Source: Mobula birostris
Taxonomy: Eukaryota
Assembly: GCF_030028105.1 (NCBI RefSeq)
Contig: NC_092384.1
Coordinates: 16,685,629 to 16,749,628 of the forward strand
Length of the DNA stretch: 64,000 nucleotides
Reading direction: 5' to 3'
The notes beneath the pieces are model-generated. The model worked only from the letters and a program-made list of their open reading frames with translations, had not been told where the DNA came from and made no database searches. The position numbers and the translations under genes were made by a program. Position 1 is the first letter of the stretch; the number at the start of each line of letters is the position of its first letter. Positions 430-64,000 of this stretch are shown here, piece by piece.

Positions 430-14297
<13,868 letters not shown>

Positions 14298-29570: not shown

Positions 29571-29840
29571 TGCAGGTCGACAGGACATCATTTGTTCATT
29601 ATGTACTGTGTCCTATGACATGGGCGATCATTGTCTTTCTATAACCATGATTGTTGTTGGCACGTTTTTCCACAGAAGTGGTTTGCCATAGCCTTTTTCT
29701 GGACAGTGTAAGGGTGATCCCAGCAAATATCAATGCTCTTCAGAGAGTGTATGACTGGCGATTGCATTGAACTGGACGGCTTAAATGGTTTGACTTGGAT
29801 TAGATGGCCGAAAGGCTTGTTTCTGGGCTATAATTCTCAA

Positions 29841-31382
29841 TGTAGCCCCCCGGCCAACCTCAGAGTCACTAGGCTCGCTGTCATCTAGGGAAATAGCCCT
29901 CGGCCCCACCAAACTGGCCCTCACTTTAATTCGGTACTGGCTCAAGGCTGCTACACATGTCCTCAGAAGCAACTCGACACGCTGGATGCCCAGACAATGT
30001 CCCCATAAACTCCAGGTCATTAACCAATCATCGACTTCTGGATAACTACTGGCACTGGTACCCAAAATCTCTGGTGCCCTTGCAGTTGTCAAGAGTAAAT
30101 GCTTCAGACACCAGTTGTAAAACGAACTGTACAACAACTTGACCTGTGCCCCGGGGTCGAGGATAGCTTTAGCATCGCTTCCCTCTATCCATAACGACAC
30201 CCTGGGGGGTGGTCCCTCTAAGCCTTCAGGAATAGGGTCTTTTCCTTTCAGAAGTTCATTGGTACATTGCTGGGAACGTGCTTCCCCAGAGACCCCAAGC
30301 CGTTCCCCCACGGGGCCTCCAGGAAGTTTCCCGACACCTCTCTGACCAGCTGAACAACTGAAGGAGGGGCTGACCCCTTGAAATGATCCCCCTGGCCTTG
30401 CAAGCAATTTAGCTGCCCTCCTAGCCAGAGAAGACACACTGAAAACTTTCCCCCCCTTTCAAATTACTGACAGCCATCACTACGGTGTAAGTGAACCCGA
30501 CAGCTCTAACACCGTCACCAGCCTGCCTACTTAAACTTTCAACCAATCCCTGTCGCTCTCCCTCAGCCGAGCACTGCCACTCATCTAACAACTGAGAGAT
30601 CTGCTCCGCCCACGTCTCGCACGCCTCTGCCCCTCTTGGGGTGGACACTATCCCAAATGCCAGGTGGAGCCTGCCAGAGCTAGAACATTTATTCGGACAC
30701 ACTACCTCCAAATCAGACCACTCTTTCCTCTCTCTCCCAACAGCATGGACAACCCCGAGTGCCACCTCCAACTCGTCAATGCCAGCCTGAACTCGAACAA
30801 AGACCGCACCCACCACGCATACAGCAATAACCAGCAAATAATCCACAGAGACACACATTACAGATTTAAACAGGGCACCCACACAGCATACCAGTAGACC
30901 CAATCCCGGACAAAAGTCCACACTTATCAAAGTTCAATCTCTTCGTGCACAAACAGTTGGAGCTCAGATCCCTTCTTCTTCACCCTGCGACCCCTCGGAC
31001 TACCTCGACCGGCCGCCTGGGACCAACTACGGTGGTCGACCAGATGCTCCACACGAGTCCGTTTCCGTCTCCTCGCCGAACGCCTGCCTCGGGATCCGAC
31101 CCTGTTAGTGGACATCACAGTACCTGGTCCATCCTCTGTCTCTCTCTCCCGCCTTCTGCCCCAAAACACCTCGCATACAGTATCTTCAAATACACCAAAA
31201 ACATAACAACTATCACAATTGGTTCATAACATATTCTTATCACTGCCTAACCCAAAACAAGCTGCTAGTGCAAAAACTTTCTCAGCGTTTAACATAACAA
31301 AGAAGCATTCTTAACTATAACATAACAAAGAAGCCATTTTAATTGGCCTACGCAGTAACATAAGAGATGAAACCCCCTTACA
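29841..31382 (-). mobile_element. Internally deleted Ty3/Gypsy LTR retrotransposon (PNMA-like gag + aspartic protease remnants)
   Basis: TG...CA termini (TGTAGCCCCC at 29841, CCCCTTACA at 31382). Gag-like TPRGAEACETWAEQISQLLDEWQCSAEGERQGLVESL; protease-like [13 protein letters not shown] (DTG decayed to DPG). No TSD seen. Confidence 0.7.
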
Positions 31383-37190: not shown

Positions 37191-37317
37191 CTACGAGTAG
37201 GGTGAGTTTCTCATCTGCTGTCATCTTTTTTCTTCCGCAGTTATTTCCTTCTCCCTCCATTCCCCAACAGCTTACGCAGGGACAACTGTCACCTTTCTTT
37301 TCCTCGGACACTATGGA

Positions 37318-37412
37318 CTATTGAAGCAGCGTTGCGCAGGTCAGTTCGTCATCGGTTCTCATACACTCACAGACATATCCTTTCTGCGGTCGTAGTTGAT
37401 CATAATATTCCT
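37318..37412 (-). CDS. Tentative cytoplasmic exon EEYYDQLRPQKGYVCECMRTDDELTCATLLQ*
   Basis: Phase-1 TAG acceptor and open frame with YxxL; AATAAA ~130 nt after the stop. An internal GTGAGT donor at 37370 makes the true ending uncertain. Confidence 0.45.
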
Positions 37413-40400
37413 CTATCAATTCCTCTCAGAAGCAAAAAGTAAAACCTGTATCACCAACCGGTTCTCCGCTCTGACGTGCTTCCTCGGAGGTTGTTTTAAT
37501 ACCTAATGGATTAAAAAATACAACACCTTAAATAATAGTGGTAACGTTGGAAAAGTTGAAGTTGCGCAATGGATTGCAATCAAATTTCTTGCCTAAAGGT
37601 GCAACTCCTGACAGCTGTCCAAAATATTATCGGCGCACACTGTGGCCATGAAATGTGTTGTGCATGACCCTTCATGAATGTAGTGGATCTAGATTTTGAT
37701 TGAAAGAGTAGAGTGGCAGTAGCAGAACGTCAGTCATGTTATATCTCAAAAGAACGAAAATATGACAGTAAAAGTATTATTACTTGTGTAAAATCGCCGC
37801 AGGAAGTCACAGCCTGAAAACCCCAGGTGTCTGAAAATCGTGGGTACAAAGGATGATTGGAGAACTTGAGCGAGAATGTAAAATTATCCTGTTATTTATA
37901 ATTAGTATTGTCGAATGTGAATCCGATAATGCCTTGGAAATCTTGATTCTCTCATTATCATTTCCTCTTTCAATCTGCAGAGGTAATAAATGGAAATACT
38001 TGTCAAATCATTCATGTTCTTACCACGTTTTTCCTTAACTCCGATTCTTATCAAAATTATAATCAGCGTTACAATTGCCAGTCCGCCCAATGCACTTCGA
38101 AAAATCAGGATTTTATTGCTGTCTTCCGGATCTGTTAAAAAAAACAAACCGTGAAACATATATAAATGTATAGAGACCGTGAGACAAGAAAGTAGAGCAT
38201 TTTAATAGGTAATTCAGGCCTGAACAAATAAAGATTGCAAGAGACGCAGTATGACACGGGTTTTAAGGTGATGATGGGACTTATGGAGCGAACAGATAAG
38301 CTTACATAGTGGTTCTTTACAGACAGTACTTTTTATTTGCATTAAGAGAATTTTTCTTTTTACTATGCCTTTGCAAATAGTTTAATCGCAACTTCGAAAT
38401 GACATCGTTTCTGTTTCTGAACTTTCACTCGAAAACTCTCTCAACAGATTCCATTAGCAAACAAGAGAAAATGGCTTTTTACCATGTGGAATTTCTCACT
38501 GTAAGAGAACACAAGAAGCATTAATAGAATATCAAATGTCGACTTTTCAGGCCGAGATCCAACATCATGACTTCATCGAGACACCATCTTACCTTGGTCC
38601 TGGATGTAGCTGAAATTGGCAGGCACCGTGAGGGAGACATGCGACACCAGACAGGTGTAAGTATCTTTTCCCAAAGTAGACTGCGTGATTTCCAATAAAC
38701 TAAATGCTTCGTACAAGCCATCCACGCTCCGGTTTGTCACACTTTCTATTCCAGTGCGAATTTGCTTGTTATTTCTTTGCCAAACGATTTCTAAGTTCTC
38801 CGGGTAGAAGGCAGCCGTTTTACAGAGGAGCTTTCGAGGAGACGAAAACCCTCCAACAGGAACAATTTCCACTGGAGTTGGAGGAGCTTGAGTAAAAACA
38901 TAGTTATATTGAGTATTTTCAATCCATATCAGTACAGGTAGATTCCTTTATCTCCCGGCCAAGTAGCATGACGCTCAACTATCAAATTAGTTACCCGCCA
39001 GTATTAACCAGTATTTAATAAGTTCTTTCAACTTCACGTTCTGTTTATTGTTGCTCAACCATATACACACACTCCGAAGCGAACCTTTGTTCTTCTGGGG
39101 CCAAGTTGCAAAATAGTGTATATATAGTCACACACATATAGTCACCATCCAGCACTGACAGTCACAAAATAAGCAAAATAAAATACAGTCAGTTTGGGAG
39201 AAGGATGAAAGGAGAAGTTCAGCGAATGCACCTCGATGGCGAAGCTAAGAGATCCGAAGTGAGGAAGAAGTTCTCTTTTGAATGGCATTTGAGCTTCATT
39301 GCACAGTTGGGCTTGCGGCGGGCGTTAGCTTTGGAAACCAGACTACCTTTGGATTTTTCATTTCGTATCAAAACTGAGCTACAAATCCCAAACTATCACA
39401 GATTTCTATAGTATGAATGCACATGGAGTTTAATATTCTGGCAGCTCAACTGCTTCGGGAGTGTTTCAAGTCCTGGGGTTGAGCTTCCTAGTCATAAACA
39501 TTCAGTAATAGAGCCTTCCCCGGAATGTGAACCATTCCTGGAACTGTTACCCCGTATTGATTGTGACAAATCATCTCCTCCGTGAAACAACCAGGAATGC
39601 AAATGCAAATTGATATTAAGTTCTTTGATTCTATAGTTGTTTTCTTTCTAAAGCCTGAAGACCTGCAGCAAAATGGTCGACAGTGACTTGGCACTGCTAT
39701 AGGATCGTTTATGAAAACGATGCCTTGTAGAGGGTCAATCAGGAATTGAACAACTTCAATTTCACCATGCACAGTGAGACCAATTTTAAGATTTTGTAAA
39801 CGTGGACCACTTCCGCGACAGCTATGGTCGGTGTCTGACAGGGGAGATCAATAGTTAGATCGTTTTATCTGTTTATCACAGCAGTTAGGGTTTCGCTGTG
39901 CCTACAATAGTCATCCTGACCGTTGCCTGACTCCACTTCCCACGCCTATACCGCCGTCAACGTTCTTGGCCTTCTCAAATTCTAGGTGGAGGACAATTCT
40001 AAGGTGAAAAAAAAATGAAGGGATTCTACAGATACATTAAGCATAAAGGGATAGCGACAGACAAAGTTGATCCATTTGAAGATCAGCGGGTTCAACAATA
40101 CATGGAACCGAAAGAACATGAACCTTATATATTTCCATTCGTATTTATTCGGGAGACGTACACAGAGACTAAGGCAAAACAGCAGCAATGTCATGGCCCA
40201 TATACCGATTACAGTCTTGAGGCAGATTAGGGTGTAGCAGTCCCCAGGACATGGCAAAGAGTCCCATCGGACCTTTTCGGAAGCTAGTGCAGAAAGTGAA
40301 AGGGCCCCGATTGAGTATTCAAAATGTTCTTACCCGTGGGTGAAGTGCCGGAGGACCAGAGTAAACTAATGTTTTAATACCATATAACTATAGGATATAG

Positions 40401-43400
40401 GAGCCTAAGCCCACCAAGTTTGCTCTGCCATTTCATCATAGATAATATTTTCTGCTCAGCCCCAATCTCCTGCCTTCTCCCCATAGCTCGTCATGCTCTA
40501 ACCGATCAAGAATCTATCAACCTCTGCTTGAAATATCCATAAAGGCTTGGTCTCCATACCTGCCTGTGGCAAAAAAAAATTCCACAGGTTCTGCACTCTC
40601 TGACCTCTTCATCTCCTCTGCACTCTCCCACCATAGGAAACATCCTCTCCACATCCACGCGATCAAGTACTTTCACCTTTCTTTAGGGTTCAATGCCGTC
40701 GCCCCTGTTTTTCTTTCTGAATTCCAGTGAAGTCAGGCCCAGAGCCATAAAACATTCTTCATATGACTAGCTATTGAATTCTGGAATCATTGTCATGAAC
40801 CTCCTTTGAATCTTCTCCAGTTTCAGCATATTCTTTCCAAGATAGGGGGCCTAAAACTGCTCACAATACGCCGTGACGCCTCACCAGTGCTTTATAAAGT
40901 CTGAATATTACATCCTTGCTTTTATATTCTAGTCCTCTTGAAATGAATGCGATCATTGGATTTGCCTTCCTGACCACGGACCCAACCTGCAAATTAACCT
41001 GTATGGAATACTGCACACGGACTCGCAAGTCCCTTACCACCTCAATGTTTTTTTGTGTTTTCTCTCCAGTTGGAAAATATTCAAAACTTTCACACCCTCC
41101 ACCAAACTGCATGACCGCACACTTCTCGATACTGTATTCTATCTGCCATTTCTTTGCCTGTCCTCCTAATCTGTCTCAGTCTTTCTGTAGCCTCTCTATT
41201 TCCTAAAACTACCTGCGCGTCCACCTCTCTTCATATCGTCTGCAAACTTTGCAACAAAGCCATCAATTCCACCATCCTTATCATTGACATATAACATTAA
41301 ACGAATCGGTCACTGCACAGACCCCTGTGGAACACCGTTAGTCACGGGCAGCCAACCAGAAAATACTCCCTTTATTCCCATTCTTTGTCTCTTACAAACC
41401 GGCCACTGCTTTATCCACCCTAGAATCTTTCCTGATATACTTTCGGCTCGTAGCTTGTTTAACAGCCTTGTGTGTGGTACCTTGTCAAAGTCCTTCTGAA
41501 AATCCAAGTACACAGCAACTGATTCTGCCTATCTTTATCTATCCTGCTTTTCATTCCGTCAAATAATTCAATCAGATTTGGCTGGCGAGAGTTTCCTTTG
41601 AAGAAATCATGCTGACAATGGTGTGTTTTATTGTGTGTCTCTAAGTAACCTAACACCTGATCCTTAATGATGGACTCCAACATCTTGACAACCAGTGAGG
41701 TTAGAGTGACTGGCCTATAGTTTCCACTTTCTGCCTCTCTGCCTTCTTGAAGACTGGAGTGACATTTGCAATTTTCCATTCTTCCAGAACCATTCCAGAA
41801 TCTAGTAATTCTCGGAAGACCTTTACTGATGCCTCCAGAATCTCTCAGCAACTTCTATCAGAATCATGGTATGTACATAATCTGGTCTAGGTGAATTACC
41901 TACTTTCAGACCTTTCAGTTTCCCAGGAACTTGCTCTCCAATTATCTCCCTAGTTTTGCCGTTGTTCTAGATAGACTCTCGGAAGAAACCAGCTAGTCTA
42001 TAATATAGTTGGTATTACAGTGAAGTGGGTAATTTATTGGAAGGTAATTCCAAAGATTGGGATACATAAATATTTAGATAGACTGGGCTTGTTTGGGAAT
42101 AAGCAACATTATTTTGTGCAATGTAGGCTCTGTCTAACCAATCTTAATGAGCTTTTCGAGCGGGTTACCATGGATCTTGATGAAGGATAACAGTGGATAT
42201 GGTCAACATGGATTTTAGCAAGAATTTTGGAAAAGTTTGGGGGGTGGTGGGCTGATCAAGTACGTTCGCTTGGCATTCAGGATGAAGGAGTAAGTTGTGT
42301 CTAACGTTGGCTTCGCGGGAGAAGCCAGAGTATGGTAGTAGATGGTTGGTTTTTGATCGTAGGCCTTTGACTGGTGGTGTGCCGCATGGCGATCAAAGCT
42401 TGCAGCGGGTTATGGACCAGGTGTAAGAATGCGCTGAAAATGGCAGATAGGATTTAATGAAGGTAATTGTAAACTGTTGTTCTTTGAGAAGACAAACCAT
42501 TCTCTGATATACACAGTGAACGAGACTGGCATTGACGAGTGCGGTAAAAAAAATCTTGGAATTATAGATCGATAATTCATTGAAAATGGAGTCAAAGGCG
42601 GATGGTATCGTAAAGATAACCTTTGTCATATTGGCCTTCATATATCAGAGTATTGAGTGTGGAAGTTGGGATGCTATGCTGAAGTTGTATTAGACGTCAG
42701 TGAGAAAAAATTTGGACTATTGTTCGCAGTTCTGGTTACCTATCTGCAGGAAAGTTATCAATATGATTAAATGAGTAGAAAGAAAACTTACAAGATGTGG
42801 CATGAATTTGAGGACATGAATTATGAGGAAAGTTTAACAGGTAAAGATTTTTTTTCCATCATTCGTAAGAGAACGAGCGAACATTTCATAGAGGTATACG
42901 AAATTATGAGGGATGTAGATATGGTGCATGTAAGCCGGCATCATCCACTGAGGTTGGGTGAGAATGTAATTGGAATTCATAGCTCCAGGGTGAAATGAGA
43001 AGTATTAAAGGCGAACCTGAGGGGAAACGTCTTTACTTAGACGGTGAAGCTATTGGGGAGTGAGCTGCCAGCGGAGGTGTTTGCGCTCGACTCTCTACGC
43101 TTTACTATTCAACCCTATCAAAATTCACCTTAACCTGAGAGGTCTATATTTCTCACAATTTATATGGTGAAAGAAGTATAGATTTTGCTAACCCTGCATA
43201 ACAAAAGTTGGAATGACATTTTGCAGTGCATGTAACAAATTGTTACTTGATGTTAGAATTAACTCGTTTGGAGCTGGGTCTACCTGTTGATGCGGAAATG
43301 GAGCATTGTGCTGCTGCATGCAGACCCTTTGATCGAGATTACTCTATTTAAGTATTAACATTTGGCGTCCTCTGTGCTGAGGCATCGAGTTATCCAACTC

Positions 43401-44396
43401 CAGCCATTCACATTAATATTAATATTATTTCAGCCTCTTGCTTGCAACACAATCCTAACCTTGCTTGAAAAGTAATTCGTTGTATTCAAAGTACCTTCGC
43501 GATAATGAGGGTAAAGTCCTAAGCTATCACTAACCTTGGACATTCGGTTTAATTGGGAGATAGCTGATGAGCAGGGCTGGACGAACAGCAGTGGGGAAAG
43601 AGCCGGGGAAGTACGATACGATAAACAGAATCAACTCCACTATGCGCCTAATAGTTGCTACATGAAATGTGATTAATTTTTCTGTTCTTTATAATTCTGA
43701 ATTTAGAATCCCTGGACTGGGCTATATCTTAACGCGGTTTGTTTTATCAAGTAGAAACATATCGTTTTCTCCTCATCACTAAGTTTGATGTAAAATGCAC
43801 AGAGCCGAAAATCTCCAAACAGCCGCACTCACCGAACACAGTGAACTTGGTGCCAGCTCCAGTCCCTAAATATTGTTCCTGAAACTTTACTGTACAGTAA
43901 TACATTCCAGAGTCGGCGAATTTGACATTCCAGAGTACAAGTGTTCCTCTTCCCCTTTCTACAGTAAATTGTCTTCTGCTGTCCCTTTCTAAAAACCCCT
44001 TCTCGCTTTTCCTCCACCAACGAACGTCAACGGTATCTTGTGATAGTGGAAATTTGCAGAACATGGTAACATTCGCACCACTCGGGACGTTCAGGTCCCG
44101 AGGGAATTGAGATACTTCGTTCGCAGTTACTTTGACGACTGCCGAAAAAATAAGCAAGAGTATTAATAACAGTTAAACACAGTGAATTAACAAAAACTGA
44201 TGACGTAAGTGACTGGACATCTAAGAGCGAAAGACGGCCGAATAGATGAAAAACGGTAACCGAATATGCTGCAGGCACCCAGGGTTAAATATTATGAAAT
44301 AGAATATTCAATTCGGAAACGGCGTGTATAAATCAGCATACTTAGCCAAGTAATAGCCAGAAGTGCCATGTACGAAACCGTAAACTTCTCCGCCAT
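37318..44396 (-). CDS. Ig-superfamily type I receptor: leader - germline-joined VJ-type domain - C1-set domain - TM (Arg) - cytoplasmic tail (NCR3/NKp30-, NCR3LG1- or VJC1-like); ~285 aa if last exon is correct
   Basis: join(44396-44342, 44138-43833, 38886-38593, 38131-38024, tentative 37412-37318). All junctions are phase 1 with GT-AG and there are no stops. Orthology not established. Confidence 0.85.
38024..38131 (-). CDS. Stalk + transmembrane exon
   Basis: Acceptor ttttttttaacAG; DPEDSNK-ILIFRSALGGLAIVTLIIILIRIG-VKEKR; donor GTAAGA. Confidence 0.88.
38593..38886 (-). CDS. C1-set exon
   Basis: APPTPVEI..KLLCKTAAFYPENLEIVW..DGLYEAFSLLEI..YTCLVSHVSL; acceptor tttttactcaAG; donor GTAAGA. 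Confidence 0.92.
40015..43085. mobile_element. Cluster of decayed CR1 fragments in both orientations in the V-C1 intron
   Basis: GNYRPVTLTSLV and YLDFQKDFDKVPH on - (41310-41851); SRGLEYKSKDV on - (40861-41112); + strand fragments at 40015-40330 and 42030-43085. Confidence 0.8.
43833..44138 (-). CDS. V-set exon with built-in J-like G strand
   Basis: Acceptor ttttttcggcAG; MFC..VRWWR..DSGMYYC..YLGTGAGTKFTVF; donor GTGAGT. Confidence 0.93.
44342..44396 (-). CDS. Receptor leader exon
   Basis: aagATGGcg context; MAEKFTVSYMALLAITWL; donor GTATGC. Joins to IVKVTA/NEVSQ, a plausible signal cleavage site. Confidence 0.75.
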
Positions 44397-55929: not shown

Positions 55930-56512
55930 GCCTCTCATTCTCAATCCTTTGACATTCTGCATACCAACCACGATGCCTGGTCAAGCTAGTCCCACTTGCC
56001 TTATTTTGGTCCATTAACTGCTGAACCCTTACTATCTACAGACCCGTGGAAATGTTTTGTAACCGTTGCTATTGCATCTACTTCAACAATATCCTCTGGC
56101 AGGTCATTCCATATCACCCTCCTCGAAAAAAAGTTGCACTCAAGTTCCTACTGAACCTTTCCACTTGCACCCTTAATCTATGTCGTCAAGTTCTTGATTC
56201 GTTAACTTTGGGAAAAAAGGCTTGAGTGAATTCATTCTATCCATGCCACTCATGATTTCATACACTTCTAAACTGTGAGGAAAGAAACCCTAGCCGGGTC
56301 AACCAGTCCCAACAATCAGACCCTCAAGGCCTGTCAACATCACTGTAAATCGTTACAGCATTCTTTTCAGTTTTATAATATCTTCCCTCCAGGAGGTTGC
56401 CCAAAACTGAACACGATACTCTAAACGTGGTCTCACCAGTGTCTTGTTTTAACCACAACATAATCTCCTCATCACTCTACTGAATGCCCTGATTGATAAA
56501 AGCCAGCATGTC
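55930..56512 (-). mobile_element. Decayed CR1 3' fragment
   Basis: Reverse complement resembles the 36285-36800 region. Confidence 0.6.
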
Positions 56513-56516
56513 AAAA

Positions 56517-57082
56517 TGTCATGGTCCGGTCCGTAAAGTCCTTATTCCAGTTCACGGTCCGGTCCATCGACCCTTGCTCCAGGTTTTCCTGTCTACCCAG
56601 TTACTGTTCTTGAGTTCTAATTGAGGCACCTGATGCCAGTTGGGGCTGGCTGCATAAATACCCTCAGAGACCAGGGCGTGGCTGCTCCATTGTTCTTGTC
56701 CTACTCCTTGTATCCCTTCCTCTGCCTTCTGTTTCCTCGCCGGTAGCCCTGCCTTGTCTTGCCGGTAACTCTCGCCTCGCCTTGCTTTGCCCGAAGCCTT
56801 ACTTTGTCTTGCCGGTAGCTCTTGCCTCACCTGAATTTCTCGTCTCCCCTTGCATTGCCTGAAGCCTTGCCTTGTCTTGCTGGGAACTCTCGCTTCGTCT
56901 CGCCTGCAGTCTTGTACTGGAGCCACTCTTTACCTAGCTCCCTTCCTGTCCCTTGCCTCCGTCAGGTAAGCCAGGCCGTCTTGCCATTACCTGCGGTTGG
57001 TTCTGTCCCATCCTGTCCCTTGCCTCTGTCGGGTGGTAATCCATGCCCTGCCCAGGAGAACTGCGCCCTGACCAGGAGGAGC
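56517..57082 (+). mobile_element. LTR-like sequence leading into the tandem array
   Basis: Starts TGTCATGGTCCGGTCC, TATA-like CATAAATA 56653-56660, pyrimidine-rich short internal repeats. No 3' CA end visible in the window. Confidence 0.5.
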
Positions 57083-57545
57083 CTGCCTAGCCTCAAGCCT
57101 GAAGACCCCAGCCTCCTGCCTGGCCTCAAGCCTGAAGACCCCAGCCTCCTGCCTGGCCTCAAGCCTGAAGACCCCAGCCTCCTGCCTGGGCTCAAGCCTG
57201 AAGAGTCCATCCTCCTGCCTGGCCTCAAGCCTGAAGAGTCCCGCCTCCTGCCTGGCCTCAAGCCTGAAGAGTCCAGCCTCCTGCCTGGCCTCAAGCCTGA
57301 AGAGTCCAGTCTCCTGCCTGGCCTCAAGCTTGAAGAGTCCTGCCTCCTGCCTGGCCTCAAGCCTGAAGAGTCCAGCCTTCTGCCTGGCCTCAAGCCTGAA
57401 GAGTCCAGTCTCCTGCCTGGCCTCAAGCCTGAAGAGTCCCGCCTCCTGCCTGGCCTCAAGACTGAAGAGTCCAGTCTCCAGCCTGGCCTCAAGCCTGAAG
57501 AGTCCATCCTCCTGCCTGGCCTCAAGCCTGTAGCCTCTAGCCTCC
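57083..57545 (+). repeat. 33-bp minisatellite, ~14 copies (CCTGGCCTCAAGCCTGAAGAGTCCAGCCTCCTG)
   Basis: Direct reading; translates as (PGLKPEESSLL)n. Confidence 0.95.
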
Positions 57546-60500
57546 TGCCAAGCCTTGGCTCAAGTCTCTAGCCTCAAGCCTGAAGACTCCAGCCTCTTGC
57601 CTCCTGCCAAGCCTCGCCTCTAGCCTCAAGTCGCAACCCTGAAGACTCCAGCCTCCTGCCTCCTGCCACGCCTCGCCTCTAGCCTCAAGCCTCAAGCCTC
57701 AAGCCTGAAGACTCAAGCCTGAAGACTCCAGCCTCCTGCCTCCTGCCAAGCCTCGCCTCTAGCCTCAAGGTTCAAACTTGAAGACTCCAGCCTCCTGCCT
57801 CCTGCCAAGCCTCGCCTCTAACCTCAAGCCTCAAGCCTGAAGACTCCAGCCTCCTGCCTCCTGCCAAGCCTCTCCTCAAGCCTCAAGACTCAAGCCTGAA
57901 GACTCCAGCCTCGTGCCTCCTGCCACGCCTCGCCTCCAGCCTCAAGCCTCAAGCCTGAAGACTCCAGCCTCCTGCCTCCTGCCAAGCCTGGGCTCAAGTC
58001 CCTAGCATTAAGCCTCAAGCTTCAAGACTACAGCCTCCTGCCTCTTGCCAAGCAGCGGCTCAAGTCTCTAGCCTCAAGCCTCAAGCCTAAAGACTCCAGC
58101 CTCCAGCCTACTGCCAAGCCTCGCCTCTAGCCTCAAGCCTCAAGCCTGAAGACTCCAGCTTCCTGCCTCCTGCCAAGCCTCTCCTCTAGCCTCAAGCTTC
58201 AAGCCTGAAGACTCCAGCCTCCTGCTTCCTGCCAAGCCTCTCCTCTAGACTCAAGCCTCAAGCCTGGACTCCAGCCTCCTGCTTCCTGCCAAGCCTCTCC
58301 TCTAGACTCAAGCCTCAAGCCTGGACCCCAGCCTCCTGCCTCCTGCCAAGCCTCGCCTCTAGCCGCAAGTCCCAAGCCTGAAGACTCCAGCCTCCTGCGT
58401 CCTGCCAAGCCTCGCCTCTAGCCTCAAGCCTCAAGCCCGAAGACTTCAGCCTCCTGCCTCATGCCAAGTCTCGCCTCTAGCCTCAAGCCGCAAGCCTCAA
58501 GACTGAAGACTCCAGCTTCCTGCCTCCTGCCAAGCCTCGCCTCTAGCCTCTAGCCTCAAGCCTCAAGCCTGAAGACTCCAGCCTCCTGCGTCCTGCCAAG
58601 CCTCGCCTCTAGCCTCTAGCCTCAAGCCTCAAGCCTGAAGACTCCAGCCTCCTGCCTCCTGCCACGGGTCGCCTCTAGCCTCAAGGTTCAAGCCTGACGA
58701 CTCCACCCTCCTGCCTCCTGCCAAGCCTCGCCTCTAGTCTCTAGCCTCAAGCTTCAAGCCTGAAGACTCCAGCCTCCTGCCTCCTGCCAAGCCTCGCCTC
58801 TAGCTTCAAGCCACAAGCCTGAAGACTCCAGCCTCCTGCCTCCTGCCAAGCCTCTCCTCTAGCCTCAAGCCTCAAGCCTGAAGACTCCAACCTCCTGCCT
58901 GCTGCCAAGCCTAGCCTCTTGCCTCAAGCTTCAAGCCTGAAGACTCCAGCCTCCTGCCTCCTGCCAACCCTCGCCTCTAGCCTCAAGCCTCAAGCCTGAA
59001 GACTCCAGCCTCCTGCCTCCTGCCAAGCCTCGCCTCTAGCCTCTAGCCTCAAGCTTCAAGCCTGAAGACTCCAGCCTCCTGTCTCCTGCCAAGCATCGCC
59101 TCTAGCCTCAAGCCTCAAGCCTCAAGCCTGAAGACTCCAGCCTCCTGCCTCCTGCCAAGCCTCGCCTCTAGCCACAAACCTCAAGCCCGAAGTCTCCAGC
59201 CTCCTGCGTCATGCCAAGTGTCGCCTGTAGCCTCAAGCCTCAAGCCTCAAGCCTGAAGACTCCAGCCTCCTGCCTCCTGCCAAGCCTCGCCTCTAGCCTC
59301 AAGGTTCAAGACTGAAGACTCCAGCCTACTGCCTCCTGCCAAGCCTCGCCTCTAGCCTCTAGCCTCAAGTTTCAAGCCTGAAAACTCCAGCCTCCTGCCT
59401 CCTGCCACGTCTCGCCTCTAGCCTCAAGCCTCAAGCCTCAAGCCTGAAGACTCCAGCCTCCTGCCTCCTGCCAAGCCTCGCCTCTAGCCTCAAGGTTCAA
59501 GACTGAAGACTCCAGCCTACTGCCTCCTGCCAAGCCTCGCCTCTAGCCTCTAGCCTCAAGCTTCAAGCCTGAAGACTCCAGCCTCCTGCCTCCTGCCAAG
59601 CCTCGCCTCTAGCCTCAAGCTTGAAGACTCCAGCCTCCTGCCTCCTGCCACGCCTCGCCTCTAGCCTCAAGCTTCAAGCCTGAAGACTCCAGCCTCCTGC
59701 CTCCTGCCAAGCCTCGCCTCTAGCCTCAAGCCTCAAGCCTGAAGACTCCAACCTCCTGCCTCCTGCCAAGCCTAGCCTCTAGCCTCTAGCCTCAAGGTTC
59801 AAGCCTGAAGACTCCAGCCTCCTGCCTCCTGCCACGCCTCGCCTCTAGCCTCAAGCCTCAAGCCCGAAGACTCCAGCCTCCTGCCTCCTGCCAACCCTCG
59901 CCTCTAGCCTCAAGCCTCAAACCTGAAGACTCCAGCCTCCTGCCTCCTGCCAAGCCTCGCCTCTATCATCAAGCCTCAAGCCTGAAGACTCCAGCCTCCT
60001 GCCTCCTGCCAAGCCTCGCCTCTAGCCTCAAGCCTCAAGCCTGAAGACTCCTGCCTCCTGCCTCCTGCCAAGCCTCGGCTCAAGTCTCTAGCGTTAAGCC
60101 TCAAGCTTCAAGACTACAGCCTCCTGCCTCCTGCCAAGCCTCGGCTCAAGTCTCTAGCCTCAACCTCAAGCCTGAAGGCTCCAGCATCCTGCCTCCTGCC
60201 AACCCTCGCCTCTAGCCTGAAGCCTCAAACCTCAAGCCTGAAGACTCCAGCTTCCTGCCTCCTGCCAAGCCTCGCCTCTAGCCTCAAGCCTCAAGCCTGA
60301 GGACTCCAGCCTCCTGCCTCCTGTCAAGCCTCGGCTCAAGTCTCTAGCGTTAAGCCTCAAGCTTCAAGACTACAGCCTCCTGCCTCCTGCCAACCCTCGC
60401 CTCTAGCCTCAAGCCTCAAACCTGAAGACTCCAGCCTCCTGCCTCCTGCGAAGCCTCGCCTCTATCATCAAGCCTCAAGCCTGAAGACTCCAGCCTCCTG

Positions 60501-63500
60501 CCTCCTGCCAAGCCTCGCCTCTAGCCTCAAGCCTCAAGCCTGAAGACTCCTGCCTCCTGCCTCCTGCCAAGCCTCGGCTCAAGTCTCTAGCGTTAAGCCT
60601 CAAGCTTCAAGACTACAGCCTCCTGCCTCCTGCCAAGCCTCGGCTCAAGTCTCTAGCCTCAACCTCAAGCCTGAAGGCTCCAGCATCCTGCCTCCTGCCA
60701 ACCCTCGCCTCTAGCCTGAAGCCTCAAACCTCAAGCCTGAAGACTCCAGCTTCCTGCCTCCTGCCAAGCCTCGCCTCTAGCCTCAAGCCTCAAGCCTGAG
60801 GACTCCAGCCTCCTGCCTCCTGTCAAGCCTCGGCTCAAGTCTCTAGCGTTAAGCCTCAAGCTTCAAGACTACAGCCTCCTGCCTCCTGCCAAGCCTCGGC
60901 TCAAGTCTTTAGCCTCAACCTCAAGCCTGAAGACTCCAGCAGCCTGCCACCTGCCAACCCTCGCCTCTAGCCTGAAGCCTCAAACCTCAAGCCTGAAGAC
61001 TCCAGCTTCCTGCCTCCTGCCAAGCCTCGCCTCTAGCCTCAAGCCTCAAGCGTCAAGGCTGAAGACTCCAGCCTCCTGCCTCCTGCCAAGCCTCGCCTCT
61101 AGCCTCAAGCCAAAAGCCTGAAGACTCCAGCCTCCTGCCTCTTGCCAAGCCTCTCCTCTACCCTCAAGCCTCAATCCTGGACTCCAGCCTCCTGCCTCCT
61201 GCCAAGCCTCGCTTCTAGCCTCTAGCCTCCAGCTCAAGCCTGAAGACTCCAGCCTCCTGCCTCCTGCCAAGCCTCGCCTGTAGCCTCAAGCCTCAAGCCT
61301 GAAGACTCCAGCCTCCTGCATCCTGCCAAGCCTCTCCTCTAGCCTCAAGCCTCAAGACTGGACTCCAGCCTCCTGCCTCCTTCCACGCCTCGCCTCTAGC
61401 TTAAATCCTCAAGCCTCAAGCCTGAAGACTCCAGCCTCCTGCCTCCTGCCAAGCCTCGCCTCTAGCCTCAGCCTCAAGCTTGAAGACTCCAGCCTCCTGC
61501 ATCCTGCCAAGCCTCGCCTCTAGTCTCTAGCCTCAAGCTTCAAGCCTGAAGACTCCAGACTCCTGCCTCCTGCCAAGCCTCGCCTCTAGCCTCAAGCCTC
61601 AAGCCTGAAGACTCCAGCCCCCTGCCTCATGCCAAGCCTCGCCTCTAGCCTCAAGTCCCAAACCTGAAGACTCTAGCCTCCTGCCTCCTGCCACGCCTCG
61701 CCTCTAGCCTCAAGTCCCAAACCTGAAGACTCTAGCCTCCTGCCTCCTGCCAAGCCTCGCCTCTAGCCTCAAGCCTCAAGCCTGAAGACTCCAGCCTCCT
61801 GCCTCCTGCCAAGCCTCGCCTCTAGCCTCTAGCCTCAAGGTTCAAGCCTGAAGACTCCACGCTCCTGCCTCCTGCCAAACCTCGCCTCTAGCCTCTAGCC
61901 TCAAGCTTCAAGCCTGAAGACTCCAGCCTCCTGCCTCCTGCCAAGCCTCGCCTCTAGCCTCAAGTCCCAAGCCTGAAAACTCCAGCCTCCTGCCTCCTGC
62001 CACGCCTCGCCTCTAGCCTCAATCCTCAAGCCTGAGGACTCCAGCCTCCTGCCTCCTGTCAAGCCTCGGCTCAAGTCTCTAGCCTCAAGCCTCAAGCCTG
62101 AAGACACCACCCTCCTGCCTTCTGCCAAGCCTCGCCTCTAGACTCAAACCTCAAGCCTCAAGCCTGAAGACTCCAGCCTCCTGCCTCCTGCCAACCCTCG
62201 CCTATAGCCTCAAGCCTCAAGCCCGAAGTCTCCAGCGTCCTGCCTACTGCCAACCCTCGCCTCTAGCCTCAAGCCTCAAGCCCGAAGACTCCAGCCTCCT
62301 GCGTCCTGCCAAGTCTCGCCTCTAGCCTCAAGCCTCAAGCCTCAAGCTTGAAGACTCCAGCTTCCTGCCTCCTGCCAAGCCTCGCCTCTAGCCTCTAGCC
62401 TCAAGCCTCAAACCTGAAGACACCAGCCTCCTGCCTCCTGCCAAGCCTCGCCTCTATCATCAAGCCTCAAGCCTGAAGTCTCCAGCCTCCTGCTTCCTGC
62501 CAAGCCTCGCCTCTAGCCTCAAGCCTCAAGCCTGAAGACTCCTGCCTCCTGCCTCCTGCCACGCTTCGCCTCTAGCCTCAAGCTTAAAGCCTGAAGACTC
62601 CAGCCTCCTGCCTCCTGCCAAGCCTCGCCTCTATCATCAAGCCTCAAGCCTGAAGACTCCAGCCTCCTGCCTCCTGCCAAGCCTCGCCTCTAGCCTCAAG
62701 CCTCAAGCCTGAGGACTCCAGCCTCCTGCATCCTGTCAAGCCTCGGCTCAAGTCTCTAGCGTTAAGCCTCAAGCTTCAAGACTACAGTCTCCTGCCTCCT
62801 GCCAAGCCTCGGCTCAAGTCTTTAGCCTCAACCTCAAGCCTGAAGACTCCAGCATCCTGCCTCCTGCCAACCCTCGCCTCTAGCCTGAAGCCTCAAACCT
62901 CAAGCCTGAAGACTCCAGCTTCCTGCCTCCTGCCAAGCCTCGCCTCTAGCCTCAAGCCTCAAGCCTCAATGCTGTCAAGCCTCGCCTCTAGCCTCAAGCC
63001 TCAAGCCTGAGGACCCCAGCCTCCTGCATCCTGTCAAGCCTCGGCTCAAGTCTCTAGCGTTAAGCCTCAAGCTTCAAGACTACAGCCTCCTGCCTCCTGC
63101 CAAGCCTCGGCTCAAGTCTTTAGCCTCAACCTCAAGCCTGAAGACTCCAGCCTCCTGCCTCCTGTCACGCCTCGCCTCTAGCCTCAAGCCTCAAGCCTGA
63201 GGACTCCAGCCTCCTGCCTCCTGCCACGCCTCGCCGCTAGCCTGAAGCATCAAGCCTGAAGACTCCAGCCTCCTGCCTCCTGCCAAGCGTCCCTTCTAGT
63301 CTCTAGCCTCAAGCTTCAAGCCTGAAGACTCCAGCCTCCTGCCTCCTGCCAAGCCTCTCCTCTAGCCTCAAGCCTAAAGCCTGAAGACTCCAGCCTCCTG
63401 CCTGCTGCCAAGCCTAGCCTCTAGCCTCAAGCTTCAAGCCTGAAGACTCCAGCCTCCTGCCTCCTGCCAAGCCTCGCCTCTAGCCACAAGACTCAAGCCT

Positions 63501-64000
63501 GAAAACTGCAGCCTCCTGCCTCCTGACAAGCCTCTCCTCTAGCCTCAAGCCTCTAGCTTGGACTCCAGCCTCCTGCCTCCTGCCAAGCCTCGCCTCTAGC
63601 CTCTAGCCTCAAGCTTCAAGCCTGAAGACTCCAGCCTCCTGCCTCCTGCCAAGCCTCGCCTCTAGCCTCAAGCCTCAAGCCTGGACTCCAGCTTCCTGCC
63701 TCCTGCCAAGCCTCGCCTCTAGCCTAAAGCCTCAAGCCCGAAGACGGCAGCCTCTTGCCTCATGCCACGTTTCGCCCCTAGCCTCAAGTCCCAAGCCTGA
63801 AGACTCCAGCCTCCTGCCTCCTGTCAAGCCTCGGCTGAAGTCTCTAGCGTTAAGCCTCAAGCCTGAAGACTCGTGCCTCCTGCCTCCTGCCTCCTGCCAA
63901 GCCTCGCCTCTAGCCTCAAGTCCCAAGCCTGAAGACTCCAGCCTCCTGCCTCCTGTAAAGCCTCGGCTCAAGTCTCTAGCGGTAAGCCTCAAGCTTCACG
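57546..64000 (+). repeat. Satellite-like tandem array, 52-bp core (CCTCAAGCCTGAAGACTCCAGCCTCCTGCCTCCTGCCAAGCCTCGCCTCTAG) plus 0-3 extra heptamers; runs off window end
   Basis: Direct reading; on the order of 100 units. Confidence 0.97.

What the first reader, a model, noticed from the sequence alone, without database searches (positions are those of the whole stretch)
37318..44396. Intact non-rearranging VJ-C1-TM receptor with antigen-receptor-chain architecture
Seen in sequence: a leader exon, then one exon encoding a full V domain ending in a J-like GTGAGTKFTV strand. A canonical C1-set exon (C-x4-FYP, W, Y-x-C-x-V-x-H) and a TM exon follow, all phase-1 spliced with no stops. Established: C1-set domains are largely confined to Ig, TCR, MHC, tapasin, SIRP and B7H6-type proteins. 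Germline-joined VJ domains (NKp30, and reported VJ-C1 genes in amphibians and birds) are discussed as models for the pre-RAG antigen receptor. Inference: this may be an uncharacterised member of that class in a cartilaginous fish.
Basis: partly seen in the sequence, partly recalled or inferred. Interest (0 to 1): 0.85.

Follow-up and report, generated by a model that had tools for sequence, protein, structure and literature searches.

The report
Manta VJ-C1 activating-type receptor gene
This is a real, spliced giant-manta gene for a membrane protein built like one T-cell-receptor chain but encoded ready-joined in the germline. It is the probable "on-switch" copy in a large, unnamed shark-and-ray family of paired on/off immune receptors, not a one-off antigen-receptor relic.

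Summary
On the minus strand there is a leader exon, a single V exon ending in a J-like G-T-G-A-G-T-K-F-T-V strand, a C1-set exon and a TM exon, all phase 1 with GT-AG borders. Only the 3' end was misplaced.

The gene is a Mobula birostris database model of 276 aa, auto-named "PD-L1-like". It belongs to a multigene family that my searches found only in Chondrichthyes, from chimaera to rays. Pipelines name its members inconsistently: SIRP-alpha-like, NCR3LG1-like, Ig-lambda-like, tapasin-related-like, TCR-beta-like.

Members have one of two tail types. Some have an uncharged TM plus an ITIM/ITSM tail. Others have an Arg in the TM plus a short tyrosine-free tail. This gene is the Arg type, and its ectodomain is 93% identical to an ITIM paralogue of the same species. 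It therefore looks like the activating half of a paired receptor, SIRP-like in design.

Sequence and fold searches place it about equally far (15-24% identity) from B7/B7-H6, SIRP, Ig/TCR and tapasin-related proteins. That gives no special support for antigen-receptor-precursor status.

The scan has already flagged other VJ-C1 receptor genes in this genome, two of them on the same piece. I found no paper describing this family, but key papers (shark B7H6, PRARP) could not be read.

The parts
44342..44396 (-). Leader exon (ATG at 44396; 18 codons + 1 nt, phase 1; split leader)
   Evidence: A paralogue transcript contig carries a 55-nt segment 5' of the V exon border at 44138 (X1 record 7).
44139..44341 (-). 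Leader intron (203 nt, GT..AG)
   Evidence: RNA contigs aligned to the V exon stop exactly at 44137/44138.
43833..44138 (-). Single V(J) exon: V-set domain with the J-like G strand included, no RSS gap
   Evidence: V-set E 6e-13. RNA contigs end exactly at 43833 and 44138.
43837..43866 (-). J-like motif G-T-G-A-G-T-K-F-T-V (x-G-x-G-T-K-F-T-V, with Thr where Ig/TCR J has Phe/Trp)
   Evidence: Read from the sequence. The family consensus is G-N-G-T-G-S-x-L-T-V.
38887..43832 (-). V-C1 intron (4.9 kb) filled with retroelement fragments
   Evidence: Loose ends at 38885-38887 read ...G-T-K-F-T-V-F joined to the C1 exon in orthologue and paralogue transcripts.
38593..38886 (-). C1-set exon (C-x4-F-Y-P, W, Y-x-C-x-V-x-H)
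   Evidence: (C1-set E 2.7e-12). A 54-nt contig with 0 mismatches covers 38834-38887.
38024..38131 (-). Stalk + TM exon, with an alternative in-frame acceptor at 38122 (database model)
   Evidence: X6 record 25 covers 38021-38136 with 0 mismatches.
38097..38099 (-). Arg codon inside the TM helix (I-L-I-F-R-S-A-L-G-G...)
   Evidence: The ITIM paralogue P0161 has Ala-Cys at this place. A Y/F-R-S motif recurs in short-tailed shark members.
37503..38023 (-). Intron between the TM and tail exons (521 nt, GT..AG). It begins with an open read-through frame that other species' database models use as the tail.
   Evidence: joint (skips 521, CT..AC on the + strand)..
37426..37502 (-). Last coding exon: (G)-I-K-T-T-S-E-E-A-R-Q-S-G-E-P-V-G-D-T-G-F-T-F-C-F, stop TGA at 37428-37426; no tyrosine
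   Evidence: X6 record 25, 0 mismatches; P0166; gene span 6971 bp.
37250..37425 (-).
   Evidence: X1 record 1 covers 37250-37410 with 0 mismatches and runs past 37250. The in-frame stop lies at 37426-37428.

Best explanation
The locus encodes a type I membrane glycoprotein of 276 or 279 aa. It has a split signal peptide and a V-set domain whose G strand is a germline-encoded J-like G-x-G-T-K-F-T-V. One C1-set domain follows, then a short acidic stalk without cysteine. The TM helix carries an Arg five residues in, and the cytoplasmic tail is short and has no tyrosine. The gene is the activating-type member of a chondrichthyan multigene family of paired VJ-C1 receptors. Shown: the gene model, the domains, the splicing, the family's distribution, and the near-identical ITIM paralogue. 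Inferred: the variable V domain binds an unknown ligand, a self marker or a pathogen product. The TM Arg recruits an Asp-bearing ITAM adaptor (DAP12, FcR-gamma or CD3-zeta type) that signals activation. The sister ITIM/ITSM paralogue, with almost the same ectodomain, recruits SHP-type phosphatases and signals inhibition. In design this is SIRP-alpha/SIRP-beta-like, or NKp30 with an added C1 domain.
For: Gene model. RNA: the TM-to-tail joint is seen in a 0-mismatch contig, and the 3'UTR is covered at 100%. Leader-V-C1 lies in one paralogue contig, and V-to-C1 junction reads come from orthologue and paralogue transcripts. Family: about 85 V-C1 proteins from at least 18 chondrichthyan species, and only those, in three word-indexed searches, an exhaustive HMMER search and AFDB clusters. 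The leader / single VJ exon / C1 / TM exon structure is conserved in Callorhinchus and Chiloscyllium, where the genes sit in clusters. Two tail types: ITIM/ITSM tails (L-T-Y-A-A-L, T-L-Y-A-D-V, T-E-Y-A-x-L) versus short tails with Arg in the TM. P0166 (this gene) is 93% identical in both V and C1 to the ITIM paralogue P0161 of the same species and groups with it at SH-aLRT 98. Arg-TM and ITIM forms interleave across the tree. Among ray paralogues V is more variable than C1 (entropy 0.89 vs 0.54), with peaks in the F-G loop. The AF2 ectodomain model is confident (pLDDT 90) and extended, and its best TM-scores (0.79-0.81) are to SIRP-alpha and SIRP-beta.
Against: There is no functional, tissue or cell-type evidence. 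RNA depth is low, and the contigs that are 100% identical cover only parts of the gene. The activating call rests on one Arg. Two short-tailed relatives with a similar TM exon (P0023, P0021) lack it. A second Arg lies near the inner end of the helix, so the helix borders are uncertain. I did not look for adaptor genes in this genome. The best rigid-body structural match is B7-H6, a ligand, not a receptor.
Confidence: 0.6

Rival explanations
1. It is a B7-H6 (NCR3LG1)-type ligand: one copy of the expanded shark and ray B7H6 family displayed on cells for recognition by the expanded NKp30 (NCR3) family.
For: B7-H6 is the top hit of the redundancy-free structural search (Z 17.1, 188 residues aligned, 22% identity). 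Database pipelines name many family members 'NCR3LG1-like'. B7-H6 is also V + C1-type. From my memory of the abstract of Flajnik et al. 2012 (cited in PMC12227049 but not readable here), B7H6 and NKp30 gene numbers co-vary 'from sharks to mammals', so the published shark B7H6 genes may be this family.
Against: The lead over Rst, Neph1, PD-L2 and butyrophilins is under 1 Z unit. Foldseek ranks NCR3LG1 level with PD-L1, Ig lambda, CD276, TAPBPR, SIRP-alpha and TCR-beta at 15-22% identity. The G strand has the G-x-G-T-x-L/F-x-V motif of receptor VJ domains. Pairs with an Arg TM or an ITIM/ITSM tail and near-identical ectodomains are a receptor hallmark. The neighbour here is NUDT21, which is not a neighbour of human NCR3LG1 on 11p15 (from memory).
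Confidence: 0.2
2. It is a surviving non-rearranging antigen-receptor-lineage chain, a UrIg/PRARP-type relic of the pre-RAG receptor, that pairs through its V and C1 domains like a TCR chain.
For: The architecture is leader / single VJ exon / one C1 / TM / short tail, with a basic residue in the TM as in TCR chains. The family profile matches Ig light chains, UrIg2 and SIRP-alpha over V plus C1. Such VJ-C1 genes are sought as antigen-receptor precursors (PMC12227049, PMC10751288).
Against: It is no closer to Ig/TCR or UrIg2 than to B7 or SIRP proteins. There is no Phe/Trp before G-x-G, no Gln in the C strand (W-W-R-K), and no stalk cysteine for an interchain bond. The predicted V-C1 arrangement is extended, not elbowed (TM 0.40-0.45 to light chains, 0.79-0.81 to SIRP). 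It is a fast-evolving multigene family with two tail types. MHC genes noted by the scan lie on other pieces of the genome (unchecked).
Confidence: 0.1
3. It is a silent or decaying copy, or an annotation artefact.
For: RNA depth is low, and no single 100%-identical contig spans all exons. Another scan note reports a frameshifted VJ-C1 copy elsewhere in this genome (unchecked).
Against: The frame is open through five exons with canonical splice sites. The M. hypostoma orthologue is 92% identical. Contigs with 0 mismatches cover the C1 start, the TM exon, the spliced TM-tail joint and the 3'UTR.
Confidence: 0.03

Closest known systems
SIRP family (SIRP-alpha / SIRP-beta, PDB 2wng, 4i2x)
   Same: The N-terminal V domain has a germline J-like x-G-x-G-T-x-L-x-V strand and is followed by C1-set domain(s). 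The family pairs ITIM-tailed members with short-tailed members that have a basic TM residue. The tail motifs resemble each other (L-T-Y-A-x-L, T-E-Y-A-x-L here; the SIRP-alpha motifs are from memory). The highest TM-scores of the model (0.79-0.81) are to SIRP-alpha/beta, and the family profile aligns over V plus C1 of SIRP-alpha.
   Different: This family has one C1 domain, not two. Identity is only 15-21%. The TM residue is Arg, not Lys. The family is chondrichthyan only, and orthology is not shown.
B7-H6 / NCR3LG1 (PDB 4zso)
   Same: V + C1-type ectodomain. Top structural match (Z 17.1, 22% identity). Frequent automatic name of family members.
   Different: B7-H6 is a ligand with a non-J G strand (from memory). 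It is not known as Arg-TM / ITIM pairs. Its margin over unrelated two-domain IgSF proteins is small.
NKp30 / NCR3 and the amphibian and reptile tandem-VJ receptors
   Same: These are the nearest non-family V domains (29-37% identity, E 1e-9 to 6e-16), and they include a frog protein named NCR3. They share the J-like G-x-G-x-G-T motif without Phe. NKp30 has an Arg in its TM (from memory).
   Different: The two hits I read (P0077, P0104) have V domains only, with no C1 domain.
UrIg / UrIg2 (PMC12227049; PDB 9dmx)
   Same: Non-rearranging elasmobranch genes with a split leader, a single VJ exon and C1 domains. UrIg2 is among the best profile matches.
   Different: UrIg has 3 C domains and is secreted. 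UrIg2 has 9-11 C domains and forms disulfide-linked dimers. This gene has one C1, no stalk cysteine and paired signalling forms. Identity to UrIg2 is 23%.
PRARP (Fu et al. 2019, J Immunol; cited in PMC10751288)
   Same: By the abstract as I recall it: non-rearranging VJ(-C1)-TM genes with an ITIM.
   Different: PRARP is reported from bony fish to birds. No sequences were available here, so the relation is untested. AFDB clusters show no bony-vertebrate cluster above 23% identity.

Membership tests
Unnamed chondrichthyan VJ-C1 paired-receptor family | V-set domain with W-W-(K/R), D-S-G-x-Y-Y-C and a G-x-G-(T/S)-G-(S/T)-x-L-x-V strand, followed by P-P-T-P-L and a C1-set domain | tested here: met
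   Alignments A1-A4. This gene is 34-93% identical to members over the ectodomain.
Unnamed chondrichthyan VJ-C1 paired-receptor family | Exon plan: leader / single VJ exon / C1 exon / TM exon | tested here: met
   Window, Callorhinchus L001 and Chiloscyllium L002.
Unnamed chondrichthyan VJ-C1 paired-receptor family | Two tail types: ITIM/ITSM tail, or short tail with Arg in the TM | tested here: met
   This gene has the Arg and a tyrosine-free tail.
SIRP | V + two C1-set domains | tested here: not met
   Only one C1 exon lies between the V and TM exons.
SIRP | Groups with SIRP by sequence (orthology) | tested here: inconclusive
   15-21% identity, level with B7, Ig and TCR hits. No tree with outgroups could be built.
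B7-H6 / NCR3LG1 | Closer to NCR3LG1 than to other IgSF families | tested here: inconclusive
   Rank 1 by VIA-align (Z 17.1 vs 16.8 and 16.3 next), but rank 5 and 12 by Foldseek at 20% identity, and not among the 60 best profile matches in the PDB.
B7-H6 / NCR3LG1 | Binds NKp30-family receptors | not testable with these tools
   Needs a binding assay.
Ig/TCR antigen-receptor chains | Separate V and J (and D) segments with RSS, joined somatically | tested here: not met
   V and the J-like strand are contiguous in one exon, and the same holds in chimaera and shark.
Ig/TCR antigen-receptor chains | J motif F/W-G-x-G, and Gln in the C strand (W-Y-x-Q), at the V-V interface | tested here: not met
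   This gene has T-G-A-G and W-W-R-K. The family consensus is N-G-T-G and W-W-K/R. The Ig/TCR motifs are established knowledge.
UrIg / UrIg2 | VJ followed by three or more C1-type domains; disulfide-linked dimer | tested here: not met
   One C1 and no stalk cysteine. The defining features are from PMC12227049.
PRARP | Sequence relationship to the chicken, frog or fish PRARP genes | not tested
   The paper and its sequences are not held. No closer bony-vertebrate cluster appears in the AFDB.
Tapasin / TAPBPR | Large N-terminal domain before the Ig domains | tested here: not met
   The signal peptide leads directly into the V domain. TAPBPR aligns only over its residues 198-404.

The most novel reading that the evidence does not exclude
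The family is a surviving non-rearranging, membrane-bound single-chain relative of the receptor from which TCR and Ig chains arose: VJ, one C1, and a TM with a basic residue that couples to CD3-zeta/FcR-gamma-type ITAM adaptors. It would have been kept only in cartilaginous fish and later diversified into on/off pairs. That would supply the membrane-signalling form that the secreted or multi-C UrIg genes lack.
Probability: 0.08. Interest if true: 0.85.

Novelty: new variant of a known kind. Interest (0 to 1): 0.45.

Why it matters
Non-rearranging VJ-C1 genes are sought as clues to the receptor that the RAG transposon split (PMC12227049, PMC10751288). In cartilaginous fish, only UrIg, UrIg2 and the V-only NCR3 family appear in the literature I could read. 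This family spans chimaera to rays, has the exact chain plan of a TCR chain, and occurs in both Arg-TM and ITIM forms. Databases hide it under at least nine unrelated automatic names. Naming it and placing it in curated trees would show whether sharks have a SIRP-like paired-receptor system, an expanded B7H6 system, or a further antigen-receptor relative. It would also correct misleading annotation. For this single gene the gain is modest, because it is one more copy of that family.

Tried and rejected
The RNA joint goes to 37502, the stop is at 37426, and the Y-x-x-L there is 3'UTR.
- Other Ig exons in the window: none. The weak C1-like hit at 30427-30654 is a PNMA/Gag-like ORF.
- Trees with named outgroups (NCR3, NCR3LG1, SIRP, tapasin, TCR, Ig, UrIg, PRARP): not possible. 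All three word-indexed protein searches returned only family members, so I held no reference sequences, and I did not type any from memory.
- Profile searches of the PDB by whole protein, V alone and C1 alone: swamped by multi-domain antibodies, titin and contactins, so they do not discriminate.
- Foldseek against the PDB: the 50 rows shown are all antibody Fab entries.
- Reading Flajnik 2012 (B7H6), Ohta & Flajnik 2015 and the UrIg 2023 paper: not held. 'PRARP' searches gave only unrelated uses of the term.
- Chromosome coordinates of paralogues in M. birostris: no DNA or ranges were returned for that assembly.
- Choice between acceptors 38131 and 38122: unresolved. The only 0-mismatch contig runs 5 nt into the intron.
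- Scan look-ups by sequence and by words: blank.
Full report
**What is in the sequence.**
The gene lies on the minus strand.
- Leader exon: 44396..44342, 55 nt, with the ATG at 44396. A 203-nt leader intron follows.
- V exon: 44138..43833, 306 nt.
- Intron of 4.9 kb, full of retroelement fragments.
- C1 exon: 38886..38593, 294 nt.
- TM exon: 38131..38024, 108 nt.

All exons are phase 1 with AG/GT borders and no stops. Pfam calls the V exon V-set (E 6e-13) and the next exon C1-set (E 2.7e-12). A language-model search agrees on C1-set.

The V exon ends ...Y-Y-C-T-V-K-F-Q-E-Q-Y-L-G-T-G-A-G-T-K-F-T-V-F, then G|gtgagt. The J-like strand (43866..43837) is therefore contiguous with V in the germline.

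**Correction of the 3' end.**
That frame is not coding.
- A contig of run X6 with 0 mismatches joins 38024 to 37502, skipping 521 nt with GT..AG borders on the minus strand.
- From 37502 the frame reads (G)-I-K-T-T-S-E-E-A-R-Q-S-G-E-P-V-G-D-T-G-F-T-F-C-F and stops at TGA 37428-37426.
- This equals the database model P0166 (276 aa) and its gene span of 6971 bp in assembly GCA_030028105.1.
- A second 0-mismatch contig covers 37250-37410, so that stretch is 3'UTR.

The TM exon has two in-frame acceptors, 38131 (D-P-E-D-S-N-K...) and 38122 (D-S-N-K..., used by the database model). The RNA did not decide between them.

**Transcription.**
Runs X1 and X6 (organism A) hold contigs identical to the window. 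They cover the start of the C1 exon, the TM exon, the TM-tail joint and the 3'UTR, at low depth.

Other contigs, 3-10% diverged (paralogues, or orthologues in organism B), end exactly at 43833, 44138, 38886 and 38593. One 413-nt contig carries a 55-nt leader-length segment, then the V exon and the start of C1.

Loose ends at 38885-38887 read ...G-T-K-F-T-V-F or ...G-T-K-I-T-V-F joined to the C1 exon. Loose ends at 38592/3 continue into two kinds of next exon. One is G-V-D-T-R-F-I-L-A-C-A, the ITIM-type paralogues. The other is D-P-Q-D-S-N-T-K-L.

The exon borders are therefore used in this gene family. For this gene itself, only the last junction is proven by an identical contig.

**The family.**
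An exhaustive HMMER search with the V domain gave about 25 single-domain hits at 38-82% identity. The 20 I looked up are all chondrichthyan. They span Mobula, Hypanus, Narcine, Scyliorhinus, Heterodontus, Chiloscyllium, Hemiscyllium, Carcharodon, Mustelus, Heptranchias and Callorhinchus.

Three word-indexed searches (whole paralogue, family profile, C1 region alone) again returned only chondrichthyans. They added Hemitrygon, Pristis, Leucoraja, Stegostoma and a sawshark.

The automatic names are contradictory: SIRP-alpha-like, NCR3LG1-like, Ig lambda-1-like, tapasin-related-like, TCR-beta-like, class II-like, CD276-like and PD-L1-like.

In AFDB clusters one shark-family model scores E 4e-21 (33% identity). 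Everything else starts at E 1e-13 with at most 23% identity.

The exon plan is the same in Callorhinchus and Chiloscyllium, where a second V-C1 or C1-set gene lies within 10 kb of the queried one.

**Paired forms.**
Family members have one of two tail types.
- An uncharged TM and a long tail with L-T-Y-A-A-L, T-L-Y-A-D-V or T-E-Y-A-x-L (ITIM/ITSM patterns).
- A short tail and an Arg near the outer end of the TM.

This gene has the Arg: I-L-I-F-R-S-A-L-G-G..., with the Arg codon at 38099-38097. A similar Y/F-R-S context recurs in short-tailed shark members (P0092, P0099, P0102). Several sharks add an Asp or Glu near the inner end of the helix.

The M. birostris ITIM paralogue P0161 has Ala-Cys where this gene has Phe-Arg.

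In a tree of 85 ectodomains, this gene groups with P0161 and its M. hypostoma orthologue P0170 at SH-aLRT 98. Arg-TM and ITIM forms interleave elsewhere in the tree.

Identity to P0161 is 93% in V and 94% in C1. Identity to the orthologue P0170 is 89% and 96%. That pattern would fit sequence exchange between the two tail types within a species.

Among ray paralogues V varies more than C1 (mean entropy 0.89 vs 0.54), with peaks in the F-G loop.

**Comparison with known families.**
The AF2 ectodomain model is confident (pLDDT 90, pTM 0.80).
- **Foldseek on Swiss-Prot:** a tie at E 1e-13 to 1e-14 and 15-22% identity among PD-L1, Ig lambda, CD276, TAPBPR, NCR3LG1, SIRP-alpha and TCR-beta. The best TM-scores (0.79-0.81) are to SIRP-alpha/beta, meaning an extended V-C1 arrangement.
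- **Redundancy-free structural search:** B7-H6 ranks first (Z 17.1, 22% identity). Rst, Neph1, PD-L2 and butyrophilins follow within one Z unit. SIRP-gamma scores 14.0, UrIg2 13.7 and a TCR chain 13.5. The C1 domain alone fits class II membrane-proximal domains best, at 25-32% identity.
- **Family profile against the PDB:** it aligns over V plus C1 of SIRP-alpha, Ig light chains and UrIg2.
- **Nearest non-family V domains:** reptile and amphibian tandem-VJ receptors at 29-37% identity, one named NCR3. The two I read through to the TM (P0077, P0104) have no C1.

No known family is clearly closest.

The G strand is x-G-x-G-T-K-F-T-V, but without the Phe/Trp of Ig/TCR J segments. The C strand reads W-W-R-K, not W-Y-x-Q. 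There is no stalk cysteine.

**Reading.**
The best-supported account is an activating-type member of a chondrichthyan paired VJ-C1 receptor family. It works like SIRP-beta versus SIRP-alpha.
- **Shown:** the gene, its domains, part of its splicing, the family, and the near-identical ITIM partner.
- **Inferred:** ligand binding by V, adaptor coupling through the Arg, and expression in immune cells.

The B7H6-ligand reading keeps real weight. I could not read the paper that described shark B7H6, and those genes may be this family. The antigen-receptor-relic reading is not excluded, but nothing supports it beyond the shared architecture.

**Context.**
NUDT21 lies on the + strand; its NUDIX_2 pieces run from 3155 to 13042. 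No other Ig exon is in the window.

The scan has already flagged several VJ-C1 ITIM receptor genes in this genome. Two are on this piece, 0.67 Mb after and 13.4 Mb before the window. Another note on this piece, 3.9 Mb before the window, reports an Arg in a TM helix. I did not test whether these belong to the same family. MHC notes are on other pieces.

Papers I could read describe UrIg, UrIg2 and NCR3 as the non-rearranging VJ genes of sharks and do not mention this family.

Noticed in passing
window 37903-38023 (minus strand, directly after the TM exon donor): If the TM exon donor is not used, the frame stays open for 40 codons (G-K-N-M-N-D-L-T-S-I-S-I-Y-Y-L...R-Q-Y, then stop). Database models of the M. 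hypostoma orthologue (P0170) and of a Hypanus sabinus relative (P0021) use exactly this read-through tail, and the Hypanus version is about 78% identical with no stop. It may be an alternative isoform, or just slow intron drift.
   Followed up: partly
P0166 vs P0161 vs P0170: The V domain of this Arg-TM gene is closer to the ITIM paralogue of the same species (93%) than to its own orthologue in M. hypostoma (89%). The TM exon resembles that of a different clade (P0023/P0021). Both hint at gene conversion or exon exchange inside the family.
   Followed up: partly
P0025, P0092, P0180, P0111: Short-tailed shark members carry an Arg near the outer end and an Asp or Glu near the inner end of the same TM helix (for example I-P-R-L-V-L-G-F-L-I-I-L-G-L-L-G-I-I-V-D-H-V). 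This is an unusual two-charge helix.
   Followed up: no
P0001 (M. birostris, 248 aa): This model joins a family V domain directly to the TM and ITIM tail with no C1 domain. It is either a C1-skipping isoform or a V-only gene on a 33.7-kb contig.
   Followed up: no
window 3155-13042, + strand: NUDT21 (CFIm25) exons. Two ORF pieces hit Pfam NUDIX_2 at E 1e-23 and 9e-14. The gene lies tail-to-tail with the receptor gene, about 24 kb away.
   Followed up: partly
window 40300-42100 (inside the V-C1 intron): Retroelement fragments with reverse-transcriptase-like ORFs on both strands reach very high summed contig depth in all four RNA runs (up to 100,000, against 2-40 for the receptor exons). These are abundant, transcribed repeat families.
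   Followed up: no
window 29781-30930, minus strand: Two long ORFs (218 and 169 aa) in a GC-rich patch. The piece at 30427-30654 hits Pfam PNMA (Gag-derived) at E 1e-6. This explains a weak false C1-like tblastn hit.
   Followed up: partly
window 56500-64000: GC jumps to 0.60 with strong negative GC skew. Long ORFs on both strands are made of repeated P-G-L-K-P-E-E-S units, so this is a satellite-like array (already noted by the scan as s1-146354).
   Followed up: no
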